From IMG/VR virus record IMGVR_UViG_3300044821_000131, positions 124,001-188,000 of that record: a stretch of 64,000 nucleotides of DNA; one strand, written 5' to 3'. Positions 705 to 56,795 of this stretch are shown here, in pieces. The translations under genes and the position numbers were made by a program. The notes under the pieces were generated by a model. That model was not told the origin of the DNA. It did no database searches and saw only the letters and a list, made by a program, of their open reading frames with translations. Each line of letters opens with the position of its first letter. Position 1 is the first letter of the stretch.

Positions 705-733
705 TTGTGACGAGTGGCGGATGATTATAAACT
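705..733 (+). promoter_or_regulatory. sigma70-like promoter (leaderless geometry)
   Basis: TTGTGA(705-710)-N17-TAAACT(728-733)-N7-ATG(741). Confidence 0.45.
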
Positions 734-740
734 CACTTTT

Positions 741-2189
741 ATGAGACAGCAATTGATTACCTGGTTGATCGACGAAATCGCACCGGAGATTCGTAAAAAT
801 CGGGATCCCGAAGGCACAATCCTCAAGTTCGCCAACGAAAAGAATTTAGCCCCGGCCTTGGTGCAAAGCCTTGGGCAACTGTTCAACACAGCCAAGACCT
901 TGGCCTTCATGGAGAAGTCCGCCAATCGTGGGGCTTCATTTCCATTACTGGACGTGGACAAGATGGTGGAAAAATATACCGCCGTGCCTCATACGAAGTC
1001 GGCCTCCAAGAATCTGATGGCAGCAACCGAATCAGCGTACGATCACTTCGGCTTCGACACTCCGTCCAAATCCTTGGCTGCCTGTTTCAAGGATGTACCT
1101 GGGTTGAAAATCGAGGATGAGCAGGTGTACAGCGAGGAACCGGTTAAATCGGCCTCGTCTGATACTCGTCAGGCGTTGCGTTCTGAATCTGAGACGCGGC
1201 ATCTGATTGATACTCTAACTCAGGCCAAGGCAGATTTTGAACAGGACGCGCGCGAGTTGCTGATGAAGTCGGCGCAGCAGATCAAACAGGCCGGGCTGAG
1301 TTTCGAAAAGATTGAGCAAGACGCGCTCTGGGTACACGGCGATATAATCAAACCGGCTACGGCGTTGTTGGCGTCTTATTGCTCGGCGGAACACATCAAA
1401 GTGGCCCGGGCACGTGATGCCGGGGAAAATCGTTTGGTTCGGGACAACCTCGATCTCATTAAGAATTTGGAACTGGTGAGTGATTGTTTGTTTAAGATCG
1501 CGGCAACCGATGAGATGATGGCAGCAACCCGCAAGTTGCCAGACAGCGCGAACCCGGTAGACCCCGCTAAAGGCTACAAGTACGAGCGTTCGCCGGATCC
1601 GGAGGAAAGGGTGCGTCCGCTTGATTTACACCAGCCGCCTGACAAACCTCATAAATCCCCAAAAGCTGACCGACCAGAGTCGCGCTCGACTGGTCGATCT
1701 GGAGGACAAAAGAGCGCACCGGCGGCCGAAGACAAGGGCTATTTCGCTCATGTCGGAGGTGCCTTAAATGCTGCGGCCGCACCTTTGACCAACATCCCTA
1801 CTTTCCAGAAGAAGTTCAAAGAGATGCTCGGGCATGGTCGCAATTCGGATCAGCAGCATGTAGATACATCGTTCGAGGATGCAAAGCATCTGGCTGTTTT
1901 ACAGAACTTGTTGACGACAGATGACGTTCTGTCCGAAGCTGATCCGGAAGCTGTCGTAAACATGTACAACACTGTGCGTCGTGCGGCTCCATCTTTGGCT
2001 GGTGACACCAATGTGATGCGAGTGGCGTTGCGCAGTATGATACAGCACGACGGCGTTTCGCCGTTTGACTTGAAAGGTTTTCTTGACACGGAGCAGGCGG
2101 GACAGAAAAATGAATTGAATAGACGCATGTTGAATGATATGGATTATGGCAATGGCAGTGTCGAATCCAAACCGGCAAAACCACAGTAA
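741..2189 (+). CDS. putative internal head protein rich in K-x-A motifs
   Basis: ORF 714..2189 with the ATG at 741 preferred; EKSA, TKSAS, VKSAS, MKSA, FKIAA motifs; upstream of the head cluster. Confidence 0.5.
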   Translation: MRQQLITWLIDEIAPEIRKNRDPEGTILKFANEKNLAPALVQSLGQLFNTAKTLAFMEKSANRGASFPLLDVDKMVEKYTAVPHTKSASKNLMAATESAYDHFGFDTPSKSLAACFKDVPGLKIEDEQVYSEEPVKSASSDTRQALRSESETRHLIDTLTQAKADFEQDARELLMKSAQQIKQAGLSFEKIEQDALWVHGDIIKPATALLASYCSAEHIKVARARDAGENRLVRDNLDLIKNLELVSDCLFKIAATDEMMAATRKLPDSANPVDPAKGYKYERSPDPEERVRPLDLHQPPDKPHKSPKADRPESRSTGRSGGQKSAPAAEDKGYFAHVGGALNAAAAPLTNIPTFQKKFKEMLGHGRNSDQQHVDTSFEDAKHLAVLQNLLTTDDVLSEADPEAVVNMYNTVRRAAPSLAGDTNVMRVALRSMIQHDGVSPFDLKGFLDTEQAGQKNELNRRMLNDMDYGNGSVESKPAKPQ

Positions 2190-2192
2190 ATT

Positions 2193-2492
2193 ATGCCCGA
2201 TGTAATAAAAACCGCAGTGGAAGTTCTAAACGATTTCTTGGCCAAGGCTCCGGAAGCCTGCAATCAACTGTGCGTCTACAAGGTGCCGGCGACGAAAGCG
2301 TTGCTGGATCACCCGACGATTCAGGTGGAAGTGGTTAGTGACACAAAATTCAAAGTAGGATTTTTGGGGCTGCTGAACGGCATTGTGGAGCCGCTTACCG
2401 GAAAACGCGTGGCCGCCATGATTGACAACGACAAGGTTGTTGGATTTGCCGAGTACAAAGTGCCGAAAACTGATAGTCAGCCTGAACCTTAA
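2193..2492 (+). CDS. hypothetical protein
   Basis: 99-aa ORF tightly packed between neighbours, A-rich start context. Confidence 0.7.
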   Translation: MPDVIKTAVEVLNDFLAKAPEACNQLCVYKVPATKALLDHPTIQVEVVSDTKFKVGFLGLLNGIVEPLTGKRVAAMIDNDKVVGFAEYKVPKTDSQPEP

Positions 2493-2493
2493 A

Positions 2494-3117
2494 ATGAAAA
2501 TACGATCTTATATTGACAATAACAACGGGCGCTACCGGGTTCAAATTGAAACATTGGGCTTCACCGCGAACGAAGAAGAGAAACTTTTGGAGTTCGGTGA
2601 ACCGCAGATCGACATCGGCTCGACATTCAATGGATCGGCCTCGCGGCCTGGTGAGAACCCAACCATCGTCACCATCCTGCCTGTCGGAGCGGGCGCCGGG
2701 GCCACTGCTACCGCTACGGTTGACGATACTGGCGCCGTTGTGAGCGTGGTCATTACCAATGCTGGCGGCGGTTATACCAGCGGAGCGACCGCGGTAGTGA
2801 CCGGCGACGGTTCGGCCGCGACGTTGACTGTAACGGTGGATCCAAGTTTGCATACGGTTACGGGCATCGCGGTTAGTGCCGGCGGTTCCGGGTACAATCA
2901 AGTACCACTATCGGTTACATTCTCGTTTCCTCCCACACTGCGGCGCATTCGTGCGGATTTCCCGATCGTGCAGGTGTTTGATCTGAACGATACACCGGAA
3001 GCAGATGTGCGGGCTAAGGTATTTTCCGACACTATTACGTCACGGCTGATCGCGGCCAAGACTGGGCTGCTTTTGATGACCTCGAATTTTGAAGGTGAAA
3101 CTTTGACCACTGTTTAA
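2494..3117 (+). CDS. virion structural protein with two GxGY beta modules
   Basis: ATG at 2494 just after the upstream TAA; ITNAGGGY and VSAGGSGY modules like those in the sheath. Confidence 0.55.
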   Translation: MKIRSYIDNNNGRYRVQIETLGFTANEEEKLLEFGEPQIDIGSTFNGSASRPGENPTIVTILPVGAGAGATATATVDDTGAVVSVVITNAGGGYTSGATAVVTGDGSAATLTVTVDPSLHTVTGIAVSAGGSGYNQVPLSVTFSFPPTLRRIRADFPIVQVFDLNDTPEADVRAKVFSDTITSRLIAAKTGLLLMTSNFEGETLTTV

Positions 3118-3118
3118 A

Positions 3119-8241: not shown

Positions 8242-8277
8242 ACCTGACGCTTACCCAAAGAAAGGAAATATACTGTT

Positions 8278-9321: not shown

Positions 9322-9339
9322 TTTCGACTCTTATCTCAC

Positions 9340-9374
9340 CCGCTCCCGAAGAAATTTGGGAGCGGTTTTTGTTT
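9340..9374 (+). terminator. rho-independent terminator after the capsid gene
   Basis: CCGCTCCC(9340-9347)/GGGAGCGG(9358-9365) stem followed by TTTTTGTTT. Confidence 0.8.
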
Positions 9375-9375
9375 A

Positions 9376-9404
9376 TTGCACCGGTCAAGTCTTTCAACTA
9401 TATT
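9376..9404 (+). promoter_or_regulatory. sigma70-like promoter (leaderless geometry)
   Basis: TTGCAC-N17-TATATT-N6-ATG(9411). Confidence 0.55.
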
Positions 9405-9410
9405 TCTTCA

Positions 9411-10079
9411 ATGAATGAAAATTTCTCTCCCGCTTTCGTCGAAGGCTTTGTCAAATCCTGCTTGGACCAAGGCTTGAACATGCCTCAAACCGAGGCGCTG
9501 TTCCGCCAGCATTCTTTTAACTATCTGTTGTCCTCGCCCAACATCTACAAAGGATTCCAAACCAAACTGGCCAGTTACACCGGACCACTGACAAAATCTG
9601 CGATGTCTCGTTTTCTCACCCCGGCGATCTTGGCCTTGGCCGCGGAGTGTCGGGTCAAGTATGCCAATGATGCGCTCTCGATTAAATTGCGTAAGGAAAC
9701 CGGGCTGCCGGATCCTTCGTGGGAGACGGTTGACCCGGAACTGCAAAAGATTGCAAACAGTTTATCTGGGGCTTTGTCCAGTTACGCAGGCCTTCCAATG
9801 AATCAGAAAATTCTTTTGGCGGCACTGGCTGGATCCGGCGTTGGTGGATTGTCAAGACTAGCGCGTCCTTCGGAGGAAGATCAGATTGAAGGGCGTGGCG
9901 CCATGAGTCGCACGCTCCGTGGAGCTGGTCGTGGGGCAGTGACCGGGGCCGGCGCCGGCGTAGGTTCTGAAGTTGGTGGTTTATCTGGCTTGGAAGCAGC
10001 AGGTTCAAAAGGCGTACTACCTGGTATGTTACTGGGTGCCGGCGCGGGTGGTTATGCTGCGCATCGTTTGACGTCATAA
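9411..10079 (+). CDS. glycine-zipper protein with K-x-A motifs (possible internal head protein)
   Basis: ATG at 9411; C-terminal GxxxG arrays (GSGVGG, GAVTGAGAGVG, GMLLGAGAGG); TKLAS, TKSA, QKIA. Confidence 0.5.
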   Translation: MNENFSPAFVEGFVKSCLDQGLNMPQTEALFRQHSFNYLLSSPNIYKGFQTKLASYTGPLTKSAMSRFLTPAILALAAECRVKYANDALSIKLRKETGLPDPSWETVDPELQKIANSLSGALSSYAGLPMNQKILLAALAGSGVGGLSRLARPSEEDQIEGRGAMSRTLRGAGRGAVTGAGAGVGSEVGGLSGLEAAGSKGVLPGMLLGAGAGGYAAHRLTS

Positions 10080-10080
10080 T

Positions 10081-10536: not shown

Positions 10537-10538
10537 AT

Positions 10539-11962: not shown

Positions 11963-11995
11963 TGATAATCTGCCAGCAACAAATTAAAACATCGT

Positions 11996-16994: not shown

Positions 16995-17046
16995 CTGGTT
17001 CGTTTTTAGTATTGACGTGACGGCGATTTGAGGCTTTGCTCTTTGC

Positions 17047-19005
17047 ATGCCGGTCGCCGTCAAACTCACTCCAGGTCTATACGAAGGTATAGTCAAAGCC
17101 TACTACCCGCCCAACAACACGATCAAAGTAAAGCTGAAGGCCGACGGTGCCGTTATACCATGCATTTGGGCCGTCGGTGTAGTGTCAGCCATGGTAGGTT
17201 TCAAGACGTCTTACTACCCGCCGATGAAGACCGAGGTGGTTGTTTTCTGGCCTGGCACCAGTCAATTCGGTTGGGTCATCGGATCCAAACCTTCGAACTC
17301 CGTTGACGCTAAACGCCAACGCCGCACCATGACCGGAGATGACGCATACAATTACGCGGCGCAGCAAACTTTTCACGTGCAGAATTCGAACAAGAACGAG
17401 GTATTCGTAGGACACAAACCTCCGGTGGATTTGGCCGAAGGTGAGATCAACATGGAGAATTGGATGGGCGTCGGTCTATCTCTGCTTCGAAATCTTTCCT
17501 CCTTACAAGCCGGAGACTTGGCTCGGATCGAATGTCATCTGCTCGACGACATGGTGCGCATCATCAGTGACACTTTTCGGCATTACACGGCCTTCGGAGA
17601 TTTCAAGGTGTCGAACGATGGCGGCAAGCTCAATGTGATCTGGAATGGCACCAAGAGTGATTTCGAGGCCCTGGGCAACCAGCACGCCACGGATCTGAAA
17701 GCCAAGATGTCCTCCCCGACCAGCATCACCGAGGATTTGAATAGCATCAATCAGATGGATGATGGGCGCTGGAGATTCAGTCAGTTTCTCGGATGGTTGG
17801 GTAACTTCATAAACGTGTTCGTCACCGATCCAGTGAACAGTCTGGGACAGATCGCCGAAGGTCAATTTCGAAGCGGCAAGGCCCGTATCCACATAAATGA
17901 CGACGGTGCTGTGCTGGTACAGTCAGTGACGGATATAGTGTTGGAGAAGGTCGTGCGGATACCGGTTCCGAATCAGTTGCGAAAAGAAGATGATCCGAAA
18001 GGAGATCTGTCAGACGCCGAGTTTCCAAATTCCGAGTATCTGAAAAATTGGACGCCGAGCAACACTAGCAATGTGTTCGAGATGGCCTATCAACTGCGCG
18101 AATACGCACGTTGGTTGAACAACACACACTCATTGTCCCGGTTTTATCAGATGACCCGGGATTGGGAGGTACCATCCGAAGCGCAGACTCCGACTCCCGA
18201 TATCAATAGTGACGAGACTGACAAATTGGCGGTGAATGCAAGGGTATCTTCTGGCTGGCGCATCGCTTATGCCACTATCCGGATATACCGGGACGGTTCG
18301 ATTCAAACGGTGGATGCTTATGGTAACGCCATAACCACCACGGCAACGGGCATTCAGATTTCCACTCCGAAGAGCTTGTTGTTGCAGGCCGGCGCCTCCG
18401 TGAATATCGTGGCGGGCACGGATGTCAACATCTTGGCGCATAATAACGTGGGCATCACTGCAGTAACTTCAGCCATTCGATTGAAGGCACAATCGGCTTT
18501 CATGCTGTGTTGTACCGCTGGAAATTTCGTGTACGAAGCAGCGCTAGATGCTTGGCACAACTTCATTGGCGGCCTGTCGGTAAACAACAACGTACAAATC
18601 TCGCCTGTGGGCATCGTGAATGTCACCACGGGTCTAAATGTGCCGCTCATAAATACTGACATAATAAACACACAGAACTCAGTTATCGTAACGGGGTCTC
18701 CTGCGACCATCGTGACGATTCCAATTCCGGATATATTTCTCTTCCAGACGGCCTATGATTCCGGAAACTTGTATCAGACCTTCACTCAACAGATGCTGGC
18801 TGACGGAGACATTCGATCCAGCGGGCAAGTCTGGCATTTCTCCGACAATGCTGTCGCCGGCAAAGGTTCACCATGGCCTGGTGCTGGTGCACAGGAGTTG
18901 ACGACGAAAGCCGGCGATAAACTAAACAAGCCGTCGAGCAACAAGAAGTTCACATCGACTCCCGCGACGATGACCCAACAAGATCCACAGATGATAACGG
19001 ATTAA
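17047..19005 (+). CDS. putative baseplate central spike (gp5/VgrG/gpV-like)
   Basis: N-terminal OB-fold-like segment (PPMKTEVVV..WVIGS) and C-terminal beta-helix-like repeats (LLLQAGASVNIVAGTDVNILAHNNVGITA). Confidence 0.55.
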   Translation: MPVAVKLTPGLYEGIVKAYYPPNNTIKVKLKADGAVIPCIWAVGVVSAMVGFKTSYYPPMKTEVVVFWPGTSQFGWVIGSKPSNSVDAKRQRRTMTGDDAYNYAAQQTFHVQNSNKNEVFVGHKPPVDLAEGEINMENWMGVGLSLLRNLSSLQAGDLARIECHLLDDMVRIISDTFRHYTAFGDFKVSNDGGKLNVIWNGTKSDFEALGNQHATDLKAKMSSPTSITEDLNSINQMDDGRWRFSQFLGWLGNFINVFVTDPVNSLGQIAEGQFRSGKARIHINDDGAVLVQSVTDIVLEKVVRIPVPNQLRKEDDPKGDLSDAEFPNSEYLKNWTPSNTSNVFEMAYQLREYARWLNNTHSLSRFYQMTRDWEVPSEAQTPTPDINSDETDKLAVNARVSSGWRIAYATIRIYRDGSIQTVDAYGNAITTTATGIQISTPKSLLLQAGASVNIVAGTDVNILAHNNVGITAVTSAIRLKAQSAFMLCCTAGNFVYEAALDAWHNFIGGLSVNNNVQISPVGIVNVTTGLNVPLINTDIINTQNSVIVTGSPATIVTIPIPDIFLFQTAYDSGNLYQTFTQQMLADGDIRSSGQVWHFSDNAVAGKGSPWPGAGAQELTTKAGDKLNKPSSNKKFTSTPATMTQQDPQMITD

Positions 19006-27381: not shown

Positions 27382-27390
27382 TTCAAGCCG

Positions 27391-28092
27391 ATGACCGCAA
27401 CTGACACAGACAGCGCCTACGCAGCCTACAGAGCCAACCCGGCGCCGGATACGTTACACGGTGTCGTCAAGACCTTGGCTCCGACGATCAATTATGCCTT
27501 GGCCTCGGTGAATGCTGTCGATGATCCTCTAGTGCGCAGCAAGGCTCAGATATACGCGGCTCAAGCTGTGGCGAAGTATGATCCGGTTTACGGCGCCAAT
27601 CTGGCTACGCACGTTGGACATCAGCTTCGGCAGTTGACACGTACGGCGCGACAGTCGCGAGCTCCGGTTAAGATTCCGGAACGCGTACAGTTGGATTCCT
27701 TCAAGTTAAGTGAAGCGAAGAAAAGTTTTATGGACGAGTTCGGGCACGAACCAGATATTCTGGAACTGGCGGACCACACCGGAATGCCGGTCAAACATAT
27801 TGAAAAACTCAACCGTTATCAGTTCAGTATTCCGTCGGAAGAAGGCTACGGAGCTGATATCGAACACGAAGGTCCAGACTTTGCTAAGGATGCACTCGAA
27901 TACATTCATCATGACTCTGATCACACCGACCGAAGGATTCTCGAGTTAAAGCTGGGGTATGGAGGTCACGCTCCGCTAAATCCGCAGGAGGTCGGGGCCA
28001 AGTTGAAGCTGACGCCATCACAGCTAAGTCGTCGGTCAATGCGTCTGGCCAAACGTATTCATGAGGTCCAGTCAGCGCTGGAGACACAATAA
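27391..28092 (+). CDS. RNA polymerase sigma-70-family factor
   Basis: region 2 AVAKYDPVYGANLATHV; VKIPER; region 3 FGHEPDILELADHTG; region 4 HTH RRILELKLG..QEVGAKLKLTPSQLSR. Confidence 0.85.
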   Translation: MTATDTDSAYAAYRANPAPDTLHGVVKTLAPTINYALASVNAVDDPLVRSKAQIYAAQAVAKYDPVYGANLATHVGHQLRQLTRTARQSRAPVKIPERVQLDSFKLSEAKKSFMDEFGHEPDILELADHTGMPVKHIEKLNRYQFSIPSEEGYGADIEHEGPDFAKDALEYIHHDSDHTDRRILELKLGYGGHAPLNPQEVGAKLKLTPSQLSRRSMRLAKRIHEVQSALETQ

Positions 28093-45267: not shown

Positions 45268-45296
45268 TTGACAGTTCTTACACCATACAATAGAAC
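45268..45296 (+). promoter_or_regulatory. sigma70-like promoter (leaderless geometry)
   Basis: TTGACA(45268)-N17-TAGAAC-N6-ATG(45303). Confidence 0.45.
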
Positions 45297-45302
45297 CAAA
45301 CC

Positions 45303-46010
45303 ATGTCTACGACCAACGATCTTATTCGCACAAAAATGGGTTTTTATGTCCTGCAAAACGATACACATTTATCGCGCTGGATCGAAAATTCAAATCAGTT
45401 GGTGATCCCTTACAACGTGGCGGAGATCGCCAGTTACGCGCACGTTATTCCTGAAGGTGGTGTGGTAATAAACGCTGGTGCCTGTCTGGGAGATCACACC
45501 GCGGCCTATGCCCATATCGTGGGCAGCCAAGGGCATGTATACGCTTTTGAGCCTCGTCCTGATACCTTTGCAGCCCTCGAAAAGAACATGAGCGTGTTCA
45601 AAAACGTACACGTGCTCAATTGTGCACTGTCCGATACCAACGGTACTGTAAATCTAGTGTTGGACCCTAACGTAGGCGCGTCTTACACTACGTCTGCGGA
45701 GGGTGACGTGAAAATAGAGCCAGCAAAGCTGGACGACTTGTTCCTGACTACATTTACACGTTGCGATTTTATCCACTTGGATGCCGAAGGCTATGAACCG
45801 AGGATACTCTTAGGAGCACAAGAGTTGATCCGGAAATTCCGACCGGCATTGGTCCTTGAACTGTGCGACCACCATCTCAAACGCGCGGGATCGTCCGAAA
45901 CAGAGCTTCTAAGCTTACTGAAAAAATGGGGATACATTGTATTCCCGATTCCCGGTCAGGTGTGTCCTGAGCAACGCGACGTTTTGGCGCTTCCGAGGAT
46001 GGCCCAATGA
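45303..46010 (+). CDS. FkbM-family SAM-dependent methyltransferase
   Basis: INAGACLGDHT, VYAFEP, NCALSD, DFIHLDAEGYEPRILLGA..RPALVLE. Confidence 0.9.
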   Translation: MSTTNDLIRTKMGFYVLQNDTHLSRWIENSNQLVIPYNVAEIASYAHVIPEGGVVINAGACLGDHTAAYAHIVGSQGHVYAFEPRPDTFAALEKNMSVFKNVHVLNCALSDTNGTVNLVLDPNVGASYTTSAEGDVKIEPAKLDDLFLTTFTRCDFIHLDAEGYEPRILLGAQELIRKFRPALVLELCDHHLKRAGSSETELLSLLKKWGYIVFPIPGQVCPEQRDVLALPRMAQ

Positions 46011-47107
46011 GACTGCACCTGCTGGCGCTTCCGAATGTTCAGACGACAAAAGCTTATTCGTTGGATGGGTTCTGTGTCGCCACCATACGCTTTGCCAAGA
46101 TGATGAAAGATATTGGTCACACGGTTATCCTCTACGCTTCGGAAGAAAATGAGGCACCGTGTGATGAACTGGTTACTGTGATCACCAAGGCTGAACAGAA
46201 GGCGCTGAGTCGTGGAGAGTATCAATACGAGGCCATGAATGAGAACTACCCGCTGTGGTCCGTGGCAAACCCACGTATCATCGAAGCAATCAGGGAGCGT
46301 AAACAGCCGCGAGATTTGCTTCTCACAATCGGCGGTGCCTCCCAAAAGGTCATAGCCGATGCCCATCCCGACTTGCCCTGTGTTGAATATTCGATCGGAT
46401 ACATTGCAAGTTTCGCGCCTTACCGCATCTACGAGAGCTGCGCCTGGCAACACTGGTCACACGGACAGCAGCAGAATCAGTTCGGAAGATTCTTCGACGA
46501 AGTCATACCCTATTTTTTCGACGAGCAAGAATTTATACCCCGGGTGAACAAGGAGAATTTCACACTGTATGTGGGTCGGCTGACTCAAAATAAAGGACTT
46601 ACCATCGCCTGTCGCGCGGCGAAACTAGCCGGAGTGCCACTGAAGGTTATAGGGCATGGAGATCCTGCCTTGGTGACGGATGGCGCCGAATATCTGGGAG
46701 TCTTGCCAGACGCGGAACGAAACGATTGGATGTCCCGAGCTTCGTCTGTATTGTGCCCTACTCTGTATTTAGAACCCTTCGGCGCGGTCGCAGTTGAGGC
46801 ACAGCTTTCTGGAACTCCGGTAATAAGCACCAACTTTGGTGGCTTCACGGAGACTGTCGAGCATGGCAAGACCGGATTTCGTTGCGCCTATTTGGGGCAG
46901 TTCGCACAGGCTTTAAAAGAGGTGTACAGCTTGGATCCAAACTACATACGACAACGCGCGGTGGAAAAATATTCCATGCACCGATTGAAGTACTCCTACG
47001 AACGTTACTTCGACAAGCTGTCGATGCTCTGGGATAAGGGCTGGGATACCACTTCAGTCAACGTGTCAGATTTCGCACCGTCGCCGATCGGTAGCGCGCA
47101 ACCGTAG
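46007..47107 (+). CDS. GT4-family (GT-B) glycosyltransferase
   Basis: YVGRLTQNKG; EPFGAVAVEAQLSGTPVIST (E-X7-E); ETVEHGKTGF. Confidence 0.9.
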   Translation: MRLHLLALPNVQTTKAYSLDGFCVATIRFAKMMKDIGHTVILYASEENEAPCDELVTVITKAEQKALSRGEYQYEAMNENYPLWSVANPRIIEAIRERKQPRDLLLTIGGASQKVIADAHPDLPCVEYSIGYIASFAPYRIYESCAWQHWSHGQQQNQFGRFFDEVIPYFFDEQEFIPRVNKENFTLYVGRLTQNKGLTIACRAAKLAGVPLKVIGHGDPALVTDGAEYLGVLPDAERNDWMSRASSVLCPTLYLEPFGAVAVEAQLSGTPVISTNFGGFTETVEHGKTGFRCAYLGQFAQALKEVYSLDPNYIRQRAVEKYSMHRLKYSYERYFDKLSMLWDKGWDTTSVNVSDFAPSPIGSAQP

Positions 47108-49545
47108 AACTTTCGTAGCAGTTCGAGCAGGGCCTCTGCATTCATTAGGATCTCCCGGAACTTGTACATTGAAGCAGAAGCGTGCTTTGTCACCAACTCC
47201 TTATGTACGTCTTGGCGCCGATGGCTGGACAGATTGGCGAAACTCAACACCATTGTACCAGAGGTTGTATCCAATTTGAAATGCTTGGGCAGGTCCTCTA
47301 AGGGTATACCGGTCAGCAGGTCACGAAAAACTGGCATGTCATCATCGAAGACCTCAAATTTCTGATATTGAGTAAAGCGCTCGATCAGCCTGCGGCCCTC
47401 AAGGATATAGTCCACCATAACCGAAGCCTGGTCATCCATCATAGGACTTACTCCGCCACTTCCTTCGCGTACCAGTCGCAGCGTGATCTGGGTGTAGATG
47501 TTGTAGGCCACGGTGTAGATTTGATCATACAGTGGCTTGTCGATCTCTACGCTAAACGGTAGTCCTAATTTACTGAGTGCCATGATGTAGCCGGACCGAC
47601 CTTGGCATCCTTCAGGGTCATGGTATAAGCCGAATACGGGATATGCGGCAAACTCGGATGGAACGAGACTTGTCTCTCGGCGTTTATTTGAGTTGAGATC
47701 GAATGGATGCACCTGGCCGAAAGGGAGAAATAACGCACCCAGCAGTTTAAGGCTGTTGTCATTGTTCGCCAACGAGAGCACAGGAAAGGTGCGCTTAAGG
47801 AAAAGTCGAGCGCACATCGAAGCCATCAGGGCCAGAAACGATTTTATCTGGGGCGTCACCAGATCGGTGGAATTGGATTGGGCGAACTTCTGAAATTTAT
47901 AATGATCCTGCAGGAGGCTGAAAAAAGGATGTCCAACACGCAGAGTTTCATCCAAGCCGGAGATCGAAACCTTCCATGTGGGCGTGTTAAAAATACTGCG
48001 ATTCGAAGTCCAGCCGAGATGTTTGAGGCCTAGTGTACTCGCGTAATTTTGACTCTGAAAGTGAGCACTCAAACTCTGCATGATGTAGGTCCTGGCCGAA
48101 GCATCATAGATGATGGGCTGGAATGCACTCTTGCCTTGGGTGTGTACCAACACCGCGGTTCGGAGCGTAGTTAGAAGATTGGCAGCCTTTTCGGCGGATT
48201 TACGATCAAGACAGAAGGGATATTCTGTGCCATCGACCATCATGGTGCCGTAGTGATAAAGATCGCCATTTTCTTGGAACCACACGCTGGAGAACAAGCG
48301 CAGTGTGAAGTTAGAACCGAGCACAGGCTGCGATGTTTTATTCTTTCGGTACACGTACCCGGCGTTGGTCTCTTCCAGTTCGACGTCGGATACGAAAAAC
48401 GTTTTTGGAGTAATCGTGTGTTTTTTGATTTTCTGTACTATATCGTCGCGCCCAAGATCATGCATCCATCCGATGATGCTATCAATAACGACACGGTCGA
48501 AACGAAGATCATCCAGCACCCGACCCACCTTCGGTGTGATATCGTTCTCGATTGCGACGGACGCTTGGAATTCAGAAACGGCAAATTCCAACCAAGTCTT
48601 ACGTTTGGGTTTCTCCGATCCTTGTAGGATATCATGTTCGACCGACACGTGATAATCGACGAAGCCTCCTCTAAAGCGAGCTATCAATGAAAGGTCGTAG
48701 TCATTGCCGGCGATGAACGTGCCGGTGCGTAATTGCATTTGATGCACTTTGCTGGAAACGTTGAAGTGCGGATGCACTACACCGAAATCGAGGTTGCCAT
48801 AATAGACACCTTGCGAGAATAACTTGGCCGACTGTAACGCGTTACCGGTCACTCGTACATCATCAGTGTCTGGGGCGATTGTGTGTAAGCCAAAGAAAGA
48901 ATGACGCGCATGGTTTATATCGACTACGACAGGGCCACCGTCGTTCAGCGGATATATCACCAACCGGGAGAATGTGTGGTAATTGCTGAAGTAGGGTAAG
49001 ACGATGTAAGTATCACAGGGCTGAAATTTTTCACTGGCGCTGTAGGGTGTCAGAAGTCCATTCAGATCAAGACCTTTGGCCACATAAAGAAAACGAGCTA
49101 CATGGGGAGCTCGAATATTTCGCCGCTCCAACCACATCAAAGCTTCCGGATAAAGTGGGGCACGATCGCGAAGGTTGAGATTCAGTTCGTAGAGCTTCAA
49201 GAACTGTGCTCGTTGAGATTCCAGCTGGCTAACGAAGACCACGCGAGAGGTGTCGGGTTGAACGTTTGCAGACGGCTCGACCATGTCCCCATAGCGGCTC
49301 ATAACGTGGTTTACGGCAAGATCATAGCCTCCCATATGAAAAGCCAGAAAATCGAACACATCCCCGGCTACAAACGAACACTTAGGATCTAGGCTGATGA
49401 ACTCATCGCCTACGAGCCAAATACGAGCATCGGCCAAGTGCGGGTGCTGGATATAGCTATAACCCGAGGCGTCCTTGATATTTAGGCCGAGATCGCGTAC
49501 GACCCGGTAAGGTTCGACGGCCTTAAAAATGTCTTGAATACGCAT
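47005..49545 (-). CDS. primase-like/DNA replication protein (divergent)
   Basis: N-terminal GDVFDFL..YDLAVNHV and ALMWLERRNI resemble the DnaG N-terminal region; SNFTLR and LGWT resemble DUF927-type segments; no clear Walker A. Confidence 0.4.
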   Translation of the reverse strand: MRIQDIFKAVEPYRVVRDLGLNIKDASGYSYIQHPHLADARIWLVGDEFISLDPKCSFVAGDVFDFLAFHMGGYDLAVNHVMSRYGDMVEPSANVQPDTSRVVFVSQLESQRAQFLKLYELNLNLRDRAPLYPEALMWLERRNIRAPHVARFLYVAKGLDLNGLLTPYSASEKFQPCDTYIVLPYFSNYHTFSRLVIYPLNDGGPVVVDINHARHSFFGLHTIAPDTDDVRVTGNALQSAKLFSQGVYYGNLDFGVVHPHFNVSSKVHQMQLRTGTFIAGNDYDLSLIARFRGGFVDYHVSVEHDILQGSEKPKRKTWLEFAVSEFQASVAIENDITPKVGRVLDDLRFDRVVIDSIIGWMHDLGRDDIVQKIKKHTITPKTFFVSDVELEETNAGYVYRKNKTSQPVLGSNFTLRLFSSVWFQENGDLYHYGTMMVDGTEYPFCLDRKSAEKAANLLTTLRTAVLVHTQGKSAFQPIIYDASARTYIMQSLSAHFQSQNYASTLGLKHLGWTSNRSIFNTPTWKVSISGLDETLRVGHPFFSLLQDHYKFQKFAQSNSTDLVTPQIKSFLALMASMCARLFLKRTFPVLSLANNDNSLKLLGALFLPFGQVHPFDLNSNKRRETSLVPSEFAAYPVFGLYHDPEGCQGRSGYIMALSKLGLPFSVEIDKPLYDQIYTVAYNIYTQITLRLVREGSGGVSPMMDDQASVMVDYILEGRRLIERFTQYQKFEVFDDDMPVFRDLLTGIPLEDLPKHFKLDTTSGTMVLSFANLSSHRRQDVHKELVTKHASASMYKFREILMNAEALLELLRKFYGCALPIGDGAKSDTLTEVVSQPLSQSIDSLSK

Positions 49546-49561
49546 TGGGGTTTAATATGAT
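49534..49561 (+). promoter_or_regulatory. sigma70-like promoter (leaderless geometry)
   Basis: TTGAAT-N16-TATGAT-N6-ATG(49568). Confidence 0.5.
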
Positions 49562-49567
49562 TGGTAC

Positions 49568-50629
49568 ATGGATTTTGTAAAAGACTGCTCTGGCCGACAT
49601 TTGCTTCGGATCAACAACTTGGTGACCGTACCGGAATACGTCAAACAAGCCTCGATCCCAGACGACGGCCTCGGTGATCTGCCCGAACACTTGTTCGCAG
49701 ATCCTGTCCGTCGTGAGTTTCCCATTGACAGCGCCGGTCATACGTATCTCAGTCAGGCTTACTGTATGTCTGCCGGAATCGATAGCAAGTCAATTCTAGG
49801 AAACATCAAATCGGCCATGTCCCGCTTTCCCGAGGTGCCGGCGGATATCGCAAAACTGGAGGCGGCCATGGATGCCAGCGTCAAATCCAGTTCTGTTGGT
49901 AATCAGCCACAGTTCGCCGTTTACGTCGATTTCGGTGCCGGCAATCCGGACTCTGAAATCGAGTACGTGAAGTCCGGCGGCGTGAAAGGTTTCTATCCCA
50001 TCAATGATGTAGACCAAGTGGTGGATTCTGCCATTCAGATCGGCAACGAGTCGCATCGCATCCCACTGGAACTCTTTGTTGAAGGTTGTCAGGCGATCTA
50101 CAAATCGGCCAAAGATATGGGTTGCACCGAGCAACTACCGAAGACCATTGTTCAATACGGCGTGGAACGCGTGCCGGATTACGAGTTCGTGAAACAACAG
50201 GCTGAGATCCGAGCGCGTGAGACGAATGACCCGATTTACATCGAACTGGCAGCTTCGGCTGAAGACGACACAGAACACGACTCCAATTTGTGGTCCGAAC
50301 TCTGGGGCAAGGCCGATGCGAGTCACGGCGTCAAGTATGCTCGGCACACGTTGAACCCCTATCAGATATTTCATTCCGGCATGCCCAAATCGGCCTTTGA
50401 AGCGGCTATCAATAAATGGACACTCTTGCATGGCGCCGCCATTCCGGTTCCTGCGCTGCAGGCTCTGAAAGAGGACAGCATCAGCCGTGTGATGTCGAAG
50501 GAAGCCGCGGACAAGGTGCAGGAGGTCCTGAACAAGTCAGCCTCAGTTACCGGGGCGGAATTGGCCAACGAGTTGTCAAAGCTCGATAAACCGATCCAGT
50601 TGGCACTGTTGAAACTGGTCGCCCAGTAA
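49568..50629 (+). CDS. putative head-associated protein with K-x-A motifs
   Basis: VKQAS, IKSA, YKSA, PKSA, NKSAS motifs. Confidence 0.45.
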   Translation: MDFVKDCSGRHLLRINNLVTVPEYVKQASIPDDGLGDLPEHLFADPVRREFPIDSAGHTYLSQAYCMSAGIDSKSILGNIKSAMSRFPEVPADIAKLEAAMDASVKSSSVGNQPQFAVYVDFGAGNPDSEIEYVKSGGVKGFYPINDVDQVVDSAIQIGNESHRIPLELFVEGCQAIYKSAKDMGCTEQLPKTIVQYGVERVPDYEFVKQQAEIRARETNDPIYIELAASAEDDTEHDSNLWSELWGKADASHGVKYARHTLNPYQIFHSGMPKSAFEAAINKWTLLHGAAIPVPALQALKEDSISRVMSKEAADKVQEVLNKSASVTGAELANELSKLDKPIQLALLKLVAQ

Positions 50630-51655: not shown

Positions 51656-51661
51656 AATACT

Positions 51662-52301: not shown

Positions 52302-52336
52302 CGGCAGGAGGCTTACAACCTCCTGCCGAACTTTTA
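52302..52336 (+). terminator. putative terminator hairpin
   Basis: perfect 10-bp stem CGGCAGGAGG/CCTCCTGCCG, 7-nt loop, then AACTTTT. Confidence 0.6.
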
Positions 52337-53695: not shown

Positions 53696-54082
53696 ATGAG
53701 CCTTAACACTGATGAGATTGAACCGGCGATTCGAGATATGCACTTTAACGGTCCTAGTACCATGCCGGGAGGAATTGACCTGCTGTGTCCCAATTGCACA
53801 TCGGTCAGTTTCGGAGCATTCGAGATATGGTATTCATACAAGACGCCGGTCGCCTTTAGAATAGGTGAGAATTGGAGAGTGGTGTCACAGAACTACTGGA
53901 GTAGTACCACCGGCAGACACTTAACGTTGATTGACGGTGGATCCAAAGAGGCCAAGAAATCCAGGGTGGATGATGCCACGTTCAACCGGCTGTGGAATGA
54001 GCAATTCGGAAAAGTGGTGCCGAAGGGCCAGGTTGTACCAAAGATAGATTCGTTCATGAGCCGAAATTTAGGGCTTGATTAA
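53696..54082 (+). CDS. phage hypothetical protein
   Basis: WYSYKTPVAF..WSSTTGRHL motif. Confidence 0.65.
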   Translation: MSLNTDEIEPAIRDMHFNGPSTMPGGIDLLCPNCTSVSFGAFEIWYSYKTPVAFRIGENWRVVSQNYWSSTTGRHLTLIDGGSKEAKKSRVDDATFNRLWNEQFGKVVPKGQVVPKIDSFMSRNLGLD

Positions 54083-54111
54083 ATGAGAACCAGTCGGCTA
54101 AAGTTCGGCCG

Positions 54112-54345
54112 ATGCAGCCCCGATACCAAGTCAAGTTCATTCAGAACAAAAAGCGCGAGCGCATCTGTATCATCATTCACCGTAACGGCCACGTGGTGCT
54201 GCAATCTGCCAGCGGCTACCGCCGACTCAACAAGGCGGTGCGAAGCGTGAAGCGATTCCTGAATGCCCTGGCTAAAGGGGACTATGTGTTCGATGTAGAA
54301 CGAGTTCCGCTGGGAAGACCGGTTGGAACCAAGAAGAAGCGGTAG
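54112..54345 (+). CDS. YegP/DUF1508-like small basic protein
   Basis: RNGHVVLQSASGYRRLNKAVRSVKRF matches the NG.ii..SegY....a...i pattern. Confidence 0.5.
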   Translation: MQPRYQVKFIQNKKRERICIIIHRNGHVVLQSASGYRRLNKAVRSVKRFLNALAKGDYVFDVERVPLGRPVGTKKKR

Positions 54346-54376
54346 ATCACCTATTTCCTTTAGCCATCAGCCGCGG

Positions 54377-56212
54377 CTATCCTGAATACGCTCCCGGGAG
54401 ATTGTAGTTGAAGTTTCCTCGTAACATCGACTCCAGCCGTAGCTTCATGCTGAGATCACTGAACATCGGCTCGCCAATCATAATCTTGCCAAGCATGTAA
54501 GCGTAGTTGAGGGCCTGCAGCGTGTCGTTCGGACGACTGGCACTAGCGCGATAAATAAACGTGTTAGTGCCAGCGTTCCCCGCCTTCTCACCCGGCGCGC
54601 GATACATGTTGAGACAGTCCGTCAAATACTCCTCAGCGTACTCCCAAGAGAAACAGCGTATACGCTTCTGGCGTATAGCATCGAAGGTGAAAGACAATGA
54701 TTCTGTTTTGTTGAGCGACCATTGATTATAGATGTGCGGTCCTTTTGGTTCAGATATGAGGGCTGTAGCGGGACCGACGTAGTTAAAGATAAGATGTTTC
54801 TCCGGCTGAATAAATTCTCGCAATTTGCTATTGTAGACTGCGCCAACACCGAAATCTGAGGCCAAGGCAAATCCCATGTGCTGCTTCCATTCCCGTATGA
54901 TGGTACCAATGATGTCGTCGTAGTTCATACCGGTAAAGCGACTCATATGCAGAATGTCAAAGAGTCCGTTTGAAGTGATACCAAGTACGACATGTACGGT
55001 CGTACTGATCTTAGTGTGAGACATAGGTTGGTAGTCACTGCCACCCCAGTCACAACCAGACACGATGTATTGATATTTTTTTGCTTGGGCGTTACGCTTG
55101 AGCAGCCCAACGTCCTTACCGAGCGTGCAGATGTCTTGTAGTTGTTGCCGAGTTATTTCACGCTCACCTTCTTCGGTTGGGACACCAAGAATTTCCTGCA
55201 GGAACTTTCGATAATCGCCTTTGTTCTTCCGCTCATAGATCTTGGACCAGCGATAAGGATTCTGGATAACGGACGGTACGATCAACTGAGGAATGTGAAA
55301 GCCATACTTCTTGGCTTCAAACGCCTGCATGTTGGAATGAAGAAATCTACCAGCGCGAACGTTCAGGAGCTTTCCACATTTGGCACAGCAAGGTCCCTCC
55401 GGTTGAATCATGTCCATCACGCCATGTTCCGGGAGTGGAATGTTCTCGTGACCGGACGGGCAGGTCATGACCCATACGCCACCTGAAGACTCTCCGTACT
55501 TCTTCTCAAGAAACGTGTCGGTGGTGAGCGAGGTGCCGGCGTAAAAAGTGATCGGGTATTCCGAGGCCGATTGTACCTGCTCGACTTCGATTTCCAGATC
55601 GGGATCGAAGTCCTGACTTTCATCGAATAAGATTTCATCGGAACTTTTGCCGCGTACATTAGACGCACTACTGAGCACGTAGGCGAGTTCGATCTTCGAT
55701 CCGTTCGCAAATTCTTTCAAGTGAAGATTCTGTCGGAGTTTGTAGTCCGGCTTGTAGTCCAGCTGCGCGCGCACCATTTCTTGTAAACGGTTGGCATAGG
55801 TCTCAAGCTGTTGACTGCGAGGACTGATGTACAGACTGGAGAATCCTGGGAACAGGCGTGTCAATAGGAGTTGACGCGCGGCGAAACTTGTGGATTTACT
55901 GATCTGTCGAGACCCCCGCAACACGGTGAACCCGCCGAGATGAATATTAAAGATTTGAAACGAAAAACCGTAATCACTAAACAGGAGCGGACGGTCTTTC
56001 GGGTAGCGCGGCCAGTAAAAACCGGTTAAGAACACCATGTTGAAATTGCAGAATTTCAAGAAATCCATCAAGGCGTCATTGAACTCCCGGGCGCCGGCAG
56101 CACTTATTTTTGATCGTTCGTAGAGGCCGGACAGTTCATTGCTGCGCGTGACGAGCTGGTGCCGAAACTCACCATCAGTGCGAAGTTTATAATCGAGGTC
56201 GAGATAAGGCAT
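54377..56212 (-). CDS. terminase large subunit
   Basis: RGSRQISKST (Walker A-like), VRGKSSDEILFDESQD (Walker B), AGTS coupling motif, Zn ribbon CPSGH..CAKC, nuclease GCDWGG and PND. Confidence 0.85.
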   Translation of the reverse strand: MPYLDLDYKLRTDGEFRHQLVTRSNELSGLYERSKISAAGAREFNDALMDFLKFCNFNMVFLTGFYWPRYPKDRPLLFSDYGFSFQIFNIHLGGFTVLRGSRQISKSTSFAARQLLLTRLFPGFSSLYISPRSQQLETYANRLQEMVRAQLDYKPDYKLRQNLHLKEFANGSKIELAYVLSSASNVRGKSSDEILFDESQDFDPDLEIEVEQVQSASEYPITFYAGTSLTTDTFLEKKYGESSGGVWVMTCPSGHENIPLPEHGVMDMIQPEGPCCAKCGKLLNVRAGRFLHSNMQAFEAKKYGFHIPQLIVPSVIQNPYRWSKIYERKNKGDYRKFLQEILGVPTEEGEREITRQQLQDICTLGKDVGLLKRNAQAKKYQYIVSGCDWGGSDYQPMSHTKISTTVHVVLGITSNGLFDILHMSRFTGMNYDDIIGTIIREWKQHMGFALASDFGVGAVYNSKLREFIQPEKHLIFNYVGPATALISEPKGPHIYNQWSLNKTESLSFTFDAIRQKRIRCFSWEYAEEYLTDCLNMYRAPGEKAGNAGTNTFIYRASASRPNDTLQALNYAYMLGKIMIGEPMFSDLSMKLRLESMLRGNFNYNLPGAYSG

Positions 56213-56226
56213 TGCCCAAATTTTTG

Positions 56227-56255
56227 TTGATAAATGCGAACCAGCGTGTTAAACA
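56227..56255 (+). promoter_or_regulatory. sigma70-like promoter (leaderless geometry)
   Basis: TTGATA-N17-TAAACA-N6-ATG(56262). Confidence 0.45.
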
Positions 56256-56261
56256 CATCTC

Positions 56262-56795
56262 ATGGCCGATACAGATAATGCGACCCAGTCGCCGACACCG
56301 CAAGTCCAAACTGAGACACCGGCACCCGCCTTACCTGAAACGCCAGACCCCGCCGACCTCCGTCCGCCACCTAAAATAAACATAAGGCTTAGACGCCAAT
56401 GCCCAGTGGAACCTCCGACTAATGTCACAAACGTCGTCGACGAGTCTTTGACCTCAGACGAACTTCATGCCCGTGTCACCATCGAAATTTGGAGTCGAAA
56501 CGAGAAGATCTACAGTGCACCACCCAGAAAATTTGATCATCCATACGGGGCGCGCCAAGACATGAAACAGGTGAGTTACGAAGAATTTCGAGACTGGTTG
56601 AAAGGTGTGGTCAAGACAGCGCAGACGATTTACTACGAATGGTGTGGCAAGGCACCGGTGGTTCCAACACCAGAAGTGAAGCCTCCAGCGGGCGCAGCAC
56701 CACAAGATCAGTATTCACTGAGCGCTATTACCAAGAACCCACCGAATATGTCTGCCGCCGTACCGCCTGTTGTACCAGAAGCCTTACCTAAATAG
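56262..56795 (+). CDS. hypothetical Pro-rich protein
   Basis: 177-aa ORF divergent from the terminase. Confidence 0.6.
   Translation: MADTDNATQSPTPQVQTETPAPALPETPDPADLRPPPKINIRLRRQCPVEPPTNVTNVVDESLTSDELHARVTIEIWSRNEKIYSAPPRKFDHPYGARQDMKQVSYEEFRDWLKGVVKTAQTIYYEWCGKAPVVPTPEVKPPAGAAPQDQYSLSAITKNPPNMSAAVPPVVPEALPK

What the first reader, a model, noticed from the sequence alone, without database searches (positions are those of the whole stretch)
705..56264. Promoters positioned for leaderless transcripts at operon starts
Seen: a TTG-type -35 hexamer lies 34-37 nt before the ATG, with a -10-like hexamer ending 6-8 nt before it, at ATG 741 (TTGTGA/TAAACT), 9411 (TTGCAC/TATATT), 17047 (TTGACG/weak TTTGCT), 27391 (TTCCAA/CATAAT), 45303 (TTGACA/TAGAAC), 49568 (TTGAAT/TATGAT), 54112 (TTGATT/TAAAGT) and 56262 (TTGATA/TAAACA). 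None has a Shine-Dalgarno sequence. Most other genes are translationally coupled or have A-rich, SD-less starts. Inference: transcription begins at or next to the AUG, so the phage relies on leaderless or SD-independent initiation. This would constrain the host lineage and might help translation after host shut-off.
Basis: partly seen in the sequence, partly recalled or inferred. Interest (0 to 1): 0.6.

Follow-up and report, generated by a model that had tools for sequence, protein, structure and literature searches.

The report
Promoters abutting start codons in phage
In this 204-kb peat phage about sixteen genes carry a bacterial-type promoter placed so that the RNA should begin at the start codon itself, a known way of expressing genes (leaderless mRNA) that is real and conserved here but has not been shown by RNA data.

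Summary
The pattern is not chance. In the whole 204,257-bp genome, sigma-70-type matches are no more numerous than in shuffles. Their position is strongly biased: the -10 hexamer ends 6-8 nt before an ATG that opens a long ORF (Poisson P about 1e-6; odds ratio 12.6, P = 6e-9).

The arrangement is kept in relatives whose intergenic DNA no longer aligns, for ATG 49568 (6 of 7 lineages), 54112 and 27391. Sites 741, 9411 and 45303 score well, but no relatives could be found to test them. Sites 17047 and 56262 are weak.

Shine-Dalgarno motifs are not used anywhere in the genome. The best reading is sigma-70-family promoters that give leaderless mRNAs at about 16-20 operon heads. These include the phage's own sigma gene and the operons holding its RNA polymerase subunit genes. 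No RNA data exist, so the transcription start sites are inferred.

Leaderless genes of this design are known in Deinococcus-Thermus, Actinobacteria and Thermus phage phiYS40, so this is a new member of a known kind. The host is unknown. The signature fits Verrucomicrobiota best, but weakly.

The parts
705..743 (+). Promoter-like element abutting ATG 741 (482-aa protein): TTGTGA, 17 nt, TAAACT, 7 nt, ATG
   Evidence: score 9.9. The upstream gene ends at 703. No Shine-Dalgarno. Conservation could not be tested: no near relative was found.
9340..9365 (+). Intrinsic-terminator-like hairpin (11-bp stem and T run) after the major-head-protein-like gene, 10 nt before the -35 of the next promoter
   Evidence: PHROG major head protein hit for 8278-9321. 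Marks an operon boundary.
9376..9413 (+). Promoter-like element abutting ATG 9411 (222-aa protein): TTGCAC, 17 nt, TATATT, 6 nt, ATG
   Evidence: score 9.9. Preceded by the terminator. No relatives found.
17012..17049 (+). Doubtful site before ATG 17047 (652-aa DUF2345/spike-like protein): TTGACG, 17 nt, TTTGCT, 6 nt, ATG
   Evidence: score 5.7. The -10 lacks the A at position 2, and GAGG lies 13 nt upstream. In relative L195 (68% aa identity) TTGACG is identical and the second hexamer is TTTTCT. The -35 is conserved; the -10 is not canonical.
27354..27393 (+). Promoter-like element abutting ATG 27391 of the phage sigma-factor gene: TTCCAA, 17 nt, CATAAT, 8 nt, ATG
   Evidence: Weak in the window (6.6), but the arrangement recurs in relatives: L191 scores 11.6, L192 8.4 and L193 7.5. 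It is roughly kept in L196 and L197 and absent in L198. The start lies 9 residues before a conserved Tyr in all four near lineages.
27391..28092 (+). Phage-encoded sigma-70-family factor (233 aa)
   Evidence: Pfam Sigma70_r3. A profile of 31 homologs matches RpoD/SigA regions 2-4 in solved structures (E = 5e-11). Weak NCBIfam RpoD/SigA matches, all far below the curated cut-offs. 69 homologs on contigs up to 224 kb.
45268..45305 (+). Promoter-like element abutting ATG 45303 (FkbM methyltransferase): TTGACA, 17 nt, TAGAAC, 6 nt, ATG
   Evidence: score 9.1. The -10 lacks the final T. The gene has no ortholog in the relatives fetched.
49534..49570 (+). Best-supported site: TTGAAT, 16 nt, TATGAT, 6 nt, ATG 49568 (353-aa protein starting MDF)
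   Evidence: Score 10.7. Six of seven lineages (44-73% aa identity) score 7.8-13.7, with the -10 ending 6-8 nt before the same conserved ATG, although the spacer DNA does not align (Fisher combined P = 1e-9). Also listed by the built-in scan.
47005..49545 (-). Divergent 846-aa gene whose ATG lies only 22 nt from ATG 49568; the -35 of the + promoter lies inside its first codons
   Evidence: The spacing is 16-24 nt in L186-L190 and 40 nt in L185. Its own leaderless-type match in the window (TTTACA/CATATT, 8.0) is not conserved.
54075..54114 (+). Promoter-like element abutting ATG 54112 (77-aa protein): TTGATT, 18 nt, TAAAGT, 7 nt, ATG
   Evidence: Score 10.0. The ortholog in the Logan contig (47% aa identity) has TTGACA, 16 nt, TAGAGT, 7 nt, ATG and scores 13.0.
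56227..56264 (+). Weak site before ATG 56262 (177-aa protein, divergent from terminase): TTGATA, 17 nt, TAAACA, 6 nt, ATG
   Evidence: Score 5.8. Relatives score 1.8 and 2.4; only the TTG is kept. Equivocal.
54377..56212 (-). Large terminase gene, divergent from 56262; no leaderless-type promoter
   Evidence: Pfam Terminase_6N at 21.8 bits, just under the 22-bit cut-off. Promoter scores are -1.2 in the window, -6.2 and 5.0 in relatives. The start codons of the divergent pair are 49 nt apart here and 9-12 nt apart in relatives.
30900..30938 (+). Matrix hit before ATG 30936 (575-aa gene inside an operon), judged chance
   Evidence: Score 8.4 in the window; 1.7, 1.0 and -8.0 in relatives.
61331..61368 (+). 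Matrix hit before ATG 61366 (NAD-dependent DNA ligase), judged chance
   Evidence: Score 9.5 with a 5-nt gap in the window; 0.6 in the relative. LigA domains.

Best explanation
About 16-20 transcription units of this phage begin with a sigma-70-family promoter (TTGnnn, 16-18 nt, TAnnnT). Its -10 hexamer ends 6-8 nt before the ATG, so RNA polymerase should start at, or within 1-2 nt of, the A of the start codon. The resulting mRNA has no leader and no Shine-Dalgarno sequence.

Such an mRNA would be translated by direct binding of the ribosome and initiator tRNA to the 5'-terminal AUG. Downstream genes in each operon would be translated by coupling or by Shine-Dalgarno-independent initiation on A-rich, G-poor starts.

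In the window this holds well for ATG 49568, 54112 and 27391, and probably for 741, 9411 and 45303. It is doubtful for 17047 and 56262.

The promoters are most simply read by the host primary-sigma holoenzyme. The same design precedes the phage's own sigma gene and the genes just upstream of its RNA polymerase beta and beta' genes, which fits a host-polymerase-first cascade.

Shown: motif geometry, positional enrichment, ATG specificity, conservation, start-codon positions, absence of Shine-Dalgarno use. Inferred: that the sites are active promoters, the start site, the translation mode, and which polymerase or sigma acts.
For: - Geometry at all eight sites.
- Genome-wide peak of the -10 to ATG distance at 6-8 nt on the coding strand only.
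- First ATGs of ORFs against other ATGs: 14/347 against 11/3310 at score 9 or more (OR 12.6, P = 6e-9).
- The bipartite nature: TTG at 16-18 nt, 21% against 6.8%.
- Hits at score 9 or more before 1.3% of ATG but only 0.1-0.4% of GTG, TTG, CTG and ATC (ATA reached 1.1%).
- Conservation with diverged spacers at 49568, 54112 and 27391. In L185, where the intergenic spacer is 40 nt instead of 16-24, the promoter stays with the + gene's ATG.
- N-termini conserved from residue 1.
- A terminator directly upstream of the 9411 promoter.
- No Shine-Dalgarno peak.
- Further sites outside the window at genome positions 26925, 29913, 43441, 44995, 65953, 79831, 92156 and 115868.
- Positions 92156 and 115868 head the stretches that hold RNA polymerase beta and beta' C-terminal genes.
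- Published basis: TANNNT about 12 bp before the start marks leaderless genes (PMC3160421); the same design in Deinococcus-Thermus (PMC12340547).
Against: - There are no RNA data. The only runs that hold the phage are DNA.
- The total number of sigma-70-like matches in the window is not above shuffles, so single sites without conservation could be chance. Three matrix hits (30936, 61366, 49545 on the - strand) were not conserved.
- Two reader sites have defective -10 hexamers.
- More distant relatives do not show the arrangement: G1 (34% GC), G2 (44% GC) and L198.
- 5' ends of the candidate mRNAs are not less structured than those of other genes.
- The phage has its own sigma and polymerase subunits, so the reading enzyme is uncertain.
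- My gene calls are home-made and imperfect.
Confidence: 0.65

Rival explanations
1. The same promoters and leaderless design, but read by the phage's own sigma-70-family factor, either with host core or with the phage-encoded split beta/beta' polymerase, rather than by the host primary sigma. The phage would then carry a private transcription system that still uses sigma-70-like -35/-10 signals.
For: The window encodes a conserved sigma (27391-28092) whose profile matches RpoD/SigA regions 2-4 best. Only one copy each of the beta (Rpb2_6) and beta' (Rpb1_2, Rpb1_5) domains was detected by Pfam. The motif precedes both early-type small genes and genes in the structural block.
Against: The sigma and polymerase genes themselves sit behind such promoters, so something must read them first. 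Studied phage multisubunit polymerases (phiKZ, AR9; from memory) use quite different, sigma-independent promoters. The specificity of this sigma cannot be read from its sequence.
Confidence: 0.2
2. The promoters are real, but the transcripts carry short leaders or translation begins at a later codon. The genes would then be short-leadered rather than leaderless.
For: The -10 to ATG distances vary from 6 to 8 nt, and reach 9 nt in L196. Start-site choice varies among polymerases. 17047 has GAGG 13 nt upstream.
Against: The mode of 6 nt is the canonical distance with a purine at +1. N-termini are conserved from residue 1. There is no Shine-Dalgarno or alternative start nearby. The -10 hexamer often supplies an in-frame stop 9 nt upstream.
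Confidence: 0.08
3. The TAnnnT element is not a promoter but an A/U-rich ribosome-recruiting element on long polycistronic mRNAs in a system without Shine-Dalgarno.
For: All gene starts in this genome are A/T-rich and G-poor upstream. Many starts share a WWTT-ATG-A context.
Against: It co-occurs with TTG at 16-18 nt. There is a terminator just upstream at 9411. At 49568 the neighbouring gene is divergent, so there is no upstream transcript on that strand. The element is bipartite and not simply A/U-rich.
Confidence: 0.04
4. Chance matches in AT-richer intergenic DNA.
For: The overall count of sigma-70-like matches equals the shuffles. Some hits are not conserved.
Against: Positional statistics and conservation across diverged relatives.
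Confidence: 0.03

Closest known systems
Leaderless genes of Deinococcus-Thermus and Actinobacteria (-10 box adjacent to the ORF; PMC3160421, PMC12340547)
   Same: TAnnnT starts about 12 nt before the start codon. The start is AUG, there is no Shine-Dalgarno, and the sites lie at operon heads.
   Different: Here it occurs in a phage genome that uses no Shine-Dalgarno at all, even for internal genes, whereas those phyla use it on leadered genes. A clear -35 TTG is present. The host is unknown and probably from neither phylum.
Thermus thermophilus phage phiYS40 (Sevostyanova et al. 2007, as summarised in PMC3594737)
   Same: A large lytic phage whose transcripts are largely leaderless and made by host-type promoters.
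   Different: In phiYS40 the leaderless class is the middle and late genes, and it was mapped experimentally, with changes in IF2 and IF3 levels. Here nothing is mapped, the sites span early-type and structural regions, and the phage has its own sigma and polymerase subunits.
Lambda cI mRNA from the PRM promoter (bioRxiv 10.1101/2023.09.02.556006)
   Same: A sigma-70 promoter starts transcription on the A of the AUG. It is divergent from a neighbouring promoter.
   Different: That is one regulatory gene in a phage that otherwise uses Shine-Dalgarno; here it is a genome-wide design.
phiKZ-like jumbo phages with split multisubunit RNA polymerases (from memory)
   Same: A genome above 200 kb with split beta and beta' genes.
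   Different: Only one copy each of the beta and beta' domains was detected here, not two. A sigma-70-family factor is present. The promoters look like sigma-70 promoters, not phiKZ-type ones. Chimallin and PhuZ were not looked for.
Shine-Dalgarno-scarce bacteria (Bacteroidota, some Verrucomicrobia; PMC10783764)
   Same: No Shine-Dalgarno enrichment, and A-rich starts.
   Different: The Bacteroidota promoter type (TTTG / TAnnTTTG, from memory) is not seen at these sites (by eye on the sequences). Sampled Verrucomicrobia genomes do show the same TAnnnT peak at -12 to -15.

Membership tests
sigma-70-type bipartite promoter | -35 hexamer resembling TTGACA | tested here: met
   TTG at 7 of 8 reader sites and TTC at 27391. 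TTG enriched 34-37 nt before non-coupled ATGs (26 against 11 expected).
sigma-70-type bipartite promoter | Spacer of 17 +/- 1 nt | tested here: met
   16, 17 or 18 nt at all eight sites and in the relatives.
sigma-70-type bipartite promoter | -10 hexamer TAnnnT (A at position 2, T at position 6) | tested here: inconclusive
   Met at 741, 9411, 49568 and 54112. A2 and T6 are kept but T1 is lost at 27391. T6 is lost at 45303 and 56262. A2 is lost at 17047.
sigma-70-type bipartite promoter | Binding and initiation by a sigma-70-family holoenzyme | not testable with these tools
   Needs in vitro transcription or ChIP.
leaderless mRNA gene | Transcription start on or within a few nt of the start codon | not testable with these tools
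   No RNA run holds the phage. Contigs cannot show 5' ends.
leaderless mRNA gene | -10 box ending 6-8 nt before the start codon, more often than chance | tested here: met
leaderless mRNA gene | AUG start codon rather than GUG or UUG | tested here: met
   Hits before 1.3% of ATG against 0.4% of GTG or TTG opening ORFs of 100 aa or more. One distant ortholog (L197) has GTG.
leaderless mRNA gene | No Shine-Dalgarno and a correctly placed start codon | tested here: met
   No core 5-10 nt upstream. N-termini conserved from residue 1 for 49568, 27391 and 54112.
leaderless mRNA gene | Unstructured 5' end | tested here: inconclusive
   Folding energy of the first 30-50 nt does not differ from other genes. 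All are weakly structured.
phiKZ-like (two-polymerase) jumbo phages | Two sets of split beta/beta' genes | tested here: not met
   One Rpb2_6 place, one gene with Rpb1_2 and one with Rpb1_5. Very divergent copies could escape Pfam.

The most novel reading that the evidence does not exclude
A clade of peat and soil jumbo phages carries a single split multisubunit RNA polymerase together with its own sigma-70-family factor. It runs a private sigma-dependent transcription system on sigma-70-like promoters fused to start codons. The host would be a Shine-Dalgarno-scarce lineage, possibly Verrucomicrobiota, in which leaderless translation has not been described. This would be the first sigma-dependent phage multisubunit polymerase and the first sign of leaderless expression in that phylum and its phages.
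Probability: 0.15. Interest if true: 0.7.

Novelty: new member of a known kind. Interest (0 to 1): 0.45.

Why it matters
Practically, start codons and operon heads in this phage clade can be called from the promoter itself, where gene finders that rely on Shine-Dalgarno will misplace starts. My own caller and the database caller did so at 741, 9411 and the L185 ortholog.

Biologically, the translation and transcription signature narrows the host of an uncultured 204-kb phage to lineages that are Shine-Dalgarno-scarce and tolerate leaderless mRNAs. It also shows that the phage's own sigma and polymerase genes sit behind host-type promoters.

The conserved 16-24 nt between divergent start codons shows that the + gene's promoter overlaps the other gene's coding sequence. 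Overlapping divergent promoters are therefore likely, though the - gene's promoter was not found. The architecture would be easy to test in vitro.

Tried and rejected
- Close relatives in cultured phages: none by megablast.
- IMG/VR single-protein scans: blank for the 353-aa, 482-aa, 222-aa and sigma proteins.
- The Logan contig could not be reached through the genome search. Two contigs had no DNA on hand.
- Distant relatives G1 (171 kb, 34% GC) and G2 (44% GC) show no 6-8 nt peak. Their orthologous starts lack the arrangement, so it is a property of the nearer clade only.
- Leaderless-type matches at 30936, 61366 and on the - strand at 49545 were rejected as not conserved. The terminase has none.
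- Alternative genetic codes do not open the low-scoring stretches.
- 5' mRNA structure: no difference from other genes.
- Phage-encoded IF3, S1 and bS21: none found.
- Host by tmRNA similarity: only the universal 3' tRNA-like end matched the candidate genomes.
- Host by LigA: the first genome scan was blank. The profile scan gave 36-42% identity. Most hits were from the Planctomycetes-Verrucomicrobia-Chlamydiae (PVC) group, and the single best was Candidatus Acidoferrum. This is suggestive only, and the query profile itself held PVC sequences.
- Word enrichment in intergenic DNA found no second promoter motif. It found only a coding 18-nt repeat and the start context TTATGA.

Full report
**What the window is**

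The window is bases 124,001-188,000 of a 204,257-bp IMG/VR virus record with 61-bp direct terminal repeats and 51% GC. Nearly all genes lie on the + strand. No cultured phage is close to it.

The window holds head, tail and baseplate genes. It also holds:
- a terminase on the - strand at 54377-56212;
- an NAD-dependent DNA ligase at 61366-63399;
- a sigma-70-family protein at 27391-28092.

Elsewhere the genome encodes one detectable copy each of three split RNA polymerase parts:
- the beta C-terminal part at 92605-94524;
- the beta' N-terminal part at 105718-107766;
- the beta' C-terminal part at 117096-118940.

The only sequencing runs that hold the phage are DNA, from peat (the likely source) and from rhizosphere.

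**Check of the observation**

All eight sites have the stated hexamers. The -35 starts 34-37 nt before the ATG, the spacer is 16-18 nt, and the -10 ends 6-8 nt before the ATG. With a sigma-70 weight matrix they score as follows.

| ATG | Score |
|---|---|
| 741 | 9.9 |
| 9411 | 9.9 |
| 17047 | 5.7 |
| 27391 | 6.6 |
| 45303 | 9.1 |
| 49568 | 10.7 |
| 54112 | 10.0 |
| 56262 | 5.8 |

None has a Shine-Dalgarno core at 5-10 nt. Site 17047 has GAGG 13 nt upstream.

**Is it more than chance?**

The plain number of sigma-70-like matches is not above shuffles: 13 against 14.1 +/- 3.6, and 28 against 20.3 +/- 3.9. What is non-random is where they sit.

- Across the genome, without using any gene calls, + strand matches scoring 9 or more are followed by an ATG after exactly 6 nt in 13 cases and after 7 nt in 6. 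Other distances give about 2.3 each, and the - strand gives 1 and 1 (Poisson P about 1e-6).
- First ATGs of ORFs of 60 aa or more carry such a match in 14 of 347 cases, against 11 of 3310 other ATGs (odds ratio 12.6, P = 6e-9). The TAA or TAG inside some -10 hexamers helps to define a 'first ATG', so this test is slightly circular. The histogram is not.
- Around 260 gene first-ATGs the profile has 8, 4 and 2 hits at 6, 7 and 8 nt, against 0.27 per position from -40 to +110 (P about 3e-13).
- TTG lies 16-18 nt upstream of 21% of ATG-proximal TAnnnT hexamers, against 6.8% of all others (P = 9e-5). The placement favours ATG (1.3%) over GTG, TTG, CTG and ATC (0.1-0.4%); ATA reached 1.1%.

The same design occurs outside the window at genome positions 26925, 29913, 43441, 44995, 65953, 79831, 92156 and 115868, among others.

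**Conservation**

Homolog searches and contig look-ups gave relatives with 42-74% protein identity.

*ATG 49568.* The protein N-terminus (Met-Asp-Phe, then a conserved run) is kept from residue 1 in all seven lineages, which fixes the start codon. Six of the seven have a TTGnnn, 16-17 nt, TAnnnT element scoring 7.8-13.7 that ends 6-8 nt before that ATG. The seventh has a defective -10. The intervening DNA is not alignable. In L185 the intergenic spacer is 40 nt rather than 16-24, and the promoter moved with the + gene's ATG.

*ATG 54112.* Its ortholog has a near-consensus promoter at the same distance, scoring 13.0.

*ATG 27391 (sigma gene).* It is weak in the window but shows the arrangement in three near relatives, scoring 11.6, 8.4 and 7.5. 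It is approximate in two further ones and absent in a GC-rich one.

*Not conserved.* Matrix hits at 30936, 61366 and on the - strand at 49545 are not conserved. 56262 is equivocal. At 17047 the TTGACG is identical in a 68%-identical relative, but the second hexamer lacks the key A in both.

*Untested.* 741, 9411 and 45303 could not be tested for lack of relatives. 9411 is preceded by a strong terminator-like hairpin at 9340-9365.

**Translation signals**

Shine-Dalgarno cores are not enriched before gene starts: 12% against 9% at random positions. G is depleted and A enriched upstream. There is no motif-to-ATG distance peak. 151 of 260 first ATGs lie less than 12 nt from the previous gene's end.

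**Mechanism**

A -10 hexamer ending 6-7 nt before the ATG puts the canonical start site on the A of the ATG, which is also a preferred initiating purine (established promoter knowledge). Published surveys take TANNNT about 12 bp before the start codon as the mark of bacterial leaderless genes (PMC3160421). The same design has been described as common in Deinococcus-Thermus (PMC12340547).

I therefore read these sites as promoters that give leaderless mRNAs at operon heads. This is inference, because there are no 5'-end data.

Host primary-sigma holoenzyme is the simplest reader. The design precedes the sigma gene, the gene at genome position 92156 just before the beta gene, and the gene at 115868 before the beta' C-terminal gene. 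This fits host polymerase acting first. The phage sigma is nearest to RpoD/SigA regions 2-4, so it could read similar signals. That rival cannot be excluded.

**Divergent pairs**

The 846-aa - strand gene and the 49568 gene have start codons 16-24 nt apart in six lineages, counting the window. The gene calls of two contigs without DNA on hand give 18 and 0 nt. Terminase and its + strand neighbour are 9-12 nt apart in two relatives. The + promoter's -35 lies inside the first codons of the - strand gene. The - strand genes show no conserved leaderless-type promoter, and how they are transcribed is unexplained.

**Host lineage**

LigA has 36-42% identity to bacterial ligases. Most of the best 80 hits are Verrucomicrobiota, Kiritimatiellia or Planctomycetota, and the single best is Candidatus Acidoferrum.

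I applied the same annotation-light analysis to stretches of candidate genomes.

| Genome sampled | Shine-Dalgarno peak | TAnnnT near -12 |
|---|---|---|
| Planctomycetota genome | strong | none |
| Five Verrucomicrobiota genomes | poor | small counts in the four short samples |
| 600 kb of one Verrucomicrobiae genome | weak | 48 hits at -15 to -11 against about 15 expected; 14 full promoter matches against about 1.5 |
| Acidobacteriota sample | weak | inconclusive |

The Verrucomicrobiae genome also shares the high A at +4. Literature lists some Verrucomicrobia among Shine-Dalgarno-scarce organisms (PMC10783764). This makes Verrucomicrobiota the best guess, at perhaps even odds. It is not a demonstration.

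**Comparison with what is known**

Leaderless expression in phages is known for lambda cI and, on a genomic scale, for Thermus phage phiYS40 (PMC3594737). The present case is a new member of that kind. Its particulars are a jumbo phage from peat, no Shine-Dalgarno use at all, a clear -35, its own sigma and one polymerase set, and conservation across a metagenomic clade. It is not phiKZ-like by the two-polymerase criterion.

**Limits**

- Gene calls came from a home-made caller with some wrong starts.
- Relatives are related by descent, so the combined P values overstate independence.
- The weight matrix uses E. coli-like frequencies from memory.
- The host analysis rests on a few genomes chosen through LigA.

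Noticed in passing
G000 54572-54991 (L018:11572-11991), outside the window: A full-length tmRNA gene (Rfam RF00023, 103 bits; aragorn tag ARYTGGSSPARPSLG). A tRNA-Met lies at G000 85142-85218.
   Followed up: partly
G000 92605-94524, 105718-107766, 117096-118940; window 27391-28092: Only one copy each of the split RNA polymerase parts was detected (beta Rpb2_6; beta' N-terminal part fused to a NUDIX domain; beta' C-terminal part). There is also a sigma-70-family factor conserved on more than 60 metagenome contigs up to 224 kb. This is an unusual combination for a jumbo phage.
   Followed up: partly
window 49543-49570 and 56210-56264; L185-L190: Divergent gene pairs have start codons only 16-24 nt apart (846-aa gene and 353-aa gene) or 9-12 nt apart (terminase and its neighbour, in relatives). 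The - strand genes have no recognisable promoter; theirs must lie inside the + gene.
   Followed up: partly
G000 2714-3304, 39263-39787, 47221-47901, 51452-51886, 78902-79693, 204023-204257 running into 2-379: A family of at least six paralogous small genes built of 18-nt tandem units, encoding hexapeptide repeats of the left-handed beta-helix type. One spans the terminal repeat.
   Followed up: no
whole genome, mostly 2-110 kb: Gene starts share a context WWTT-ATG-A. T is at -1 in 51% of starts and A at +4 in about 50%. TTATGA occurs 20 times near intergenic regions against 5 expected. Its meaning (translation context or another promoter class) is unknown.
   Followed up: partly
L186 16847-20047; L188 18376-20951: In relatives the terminase gene is interrupted. 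One carries an intein-splicing domain (1066 aa against 611 aa here). Another has a LAGLIDADG endonuclease gene beside a truncated match.
   Followed up: no
G000 8217-12044 and 43441-44985: A 1275-aa family-A DNA polymerase carries an N-terminal uracil-DNA-glycosylase-superfamily domain. A 514-aa protein has a 2'-5' RNA ligase domain and a weaker Acb1-like hit (below its cut-off); it sits behind one of the strongest leaderless-type promoters.
   Followed up: no
window 52302-52328: A strong terminator-like hairpin (10-bp stem, 8 G-C pairs) lies between small genes.
   Followed up: no
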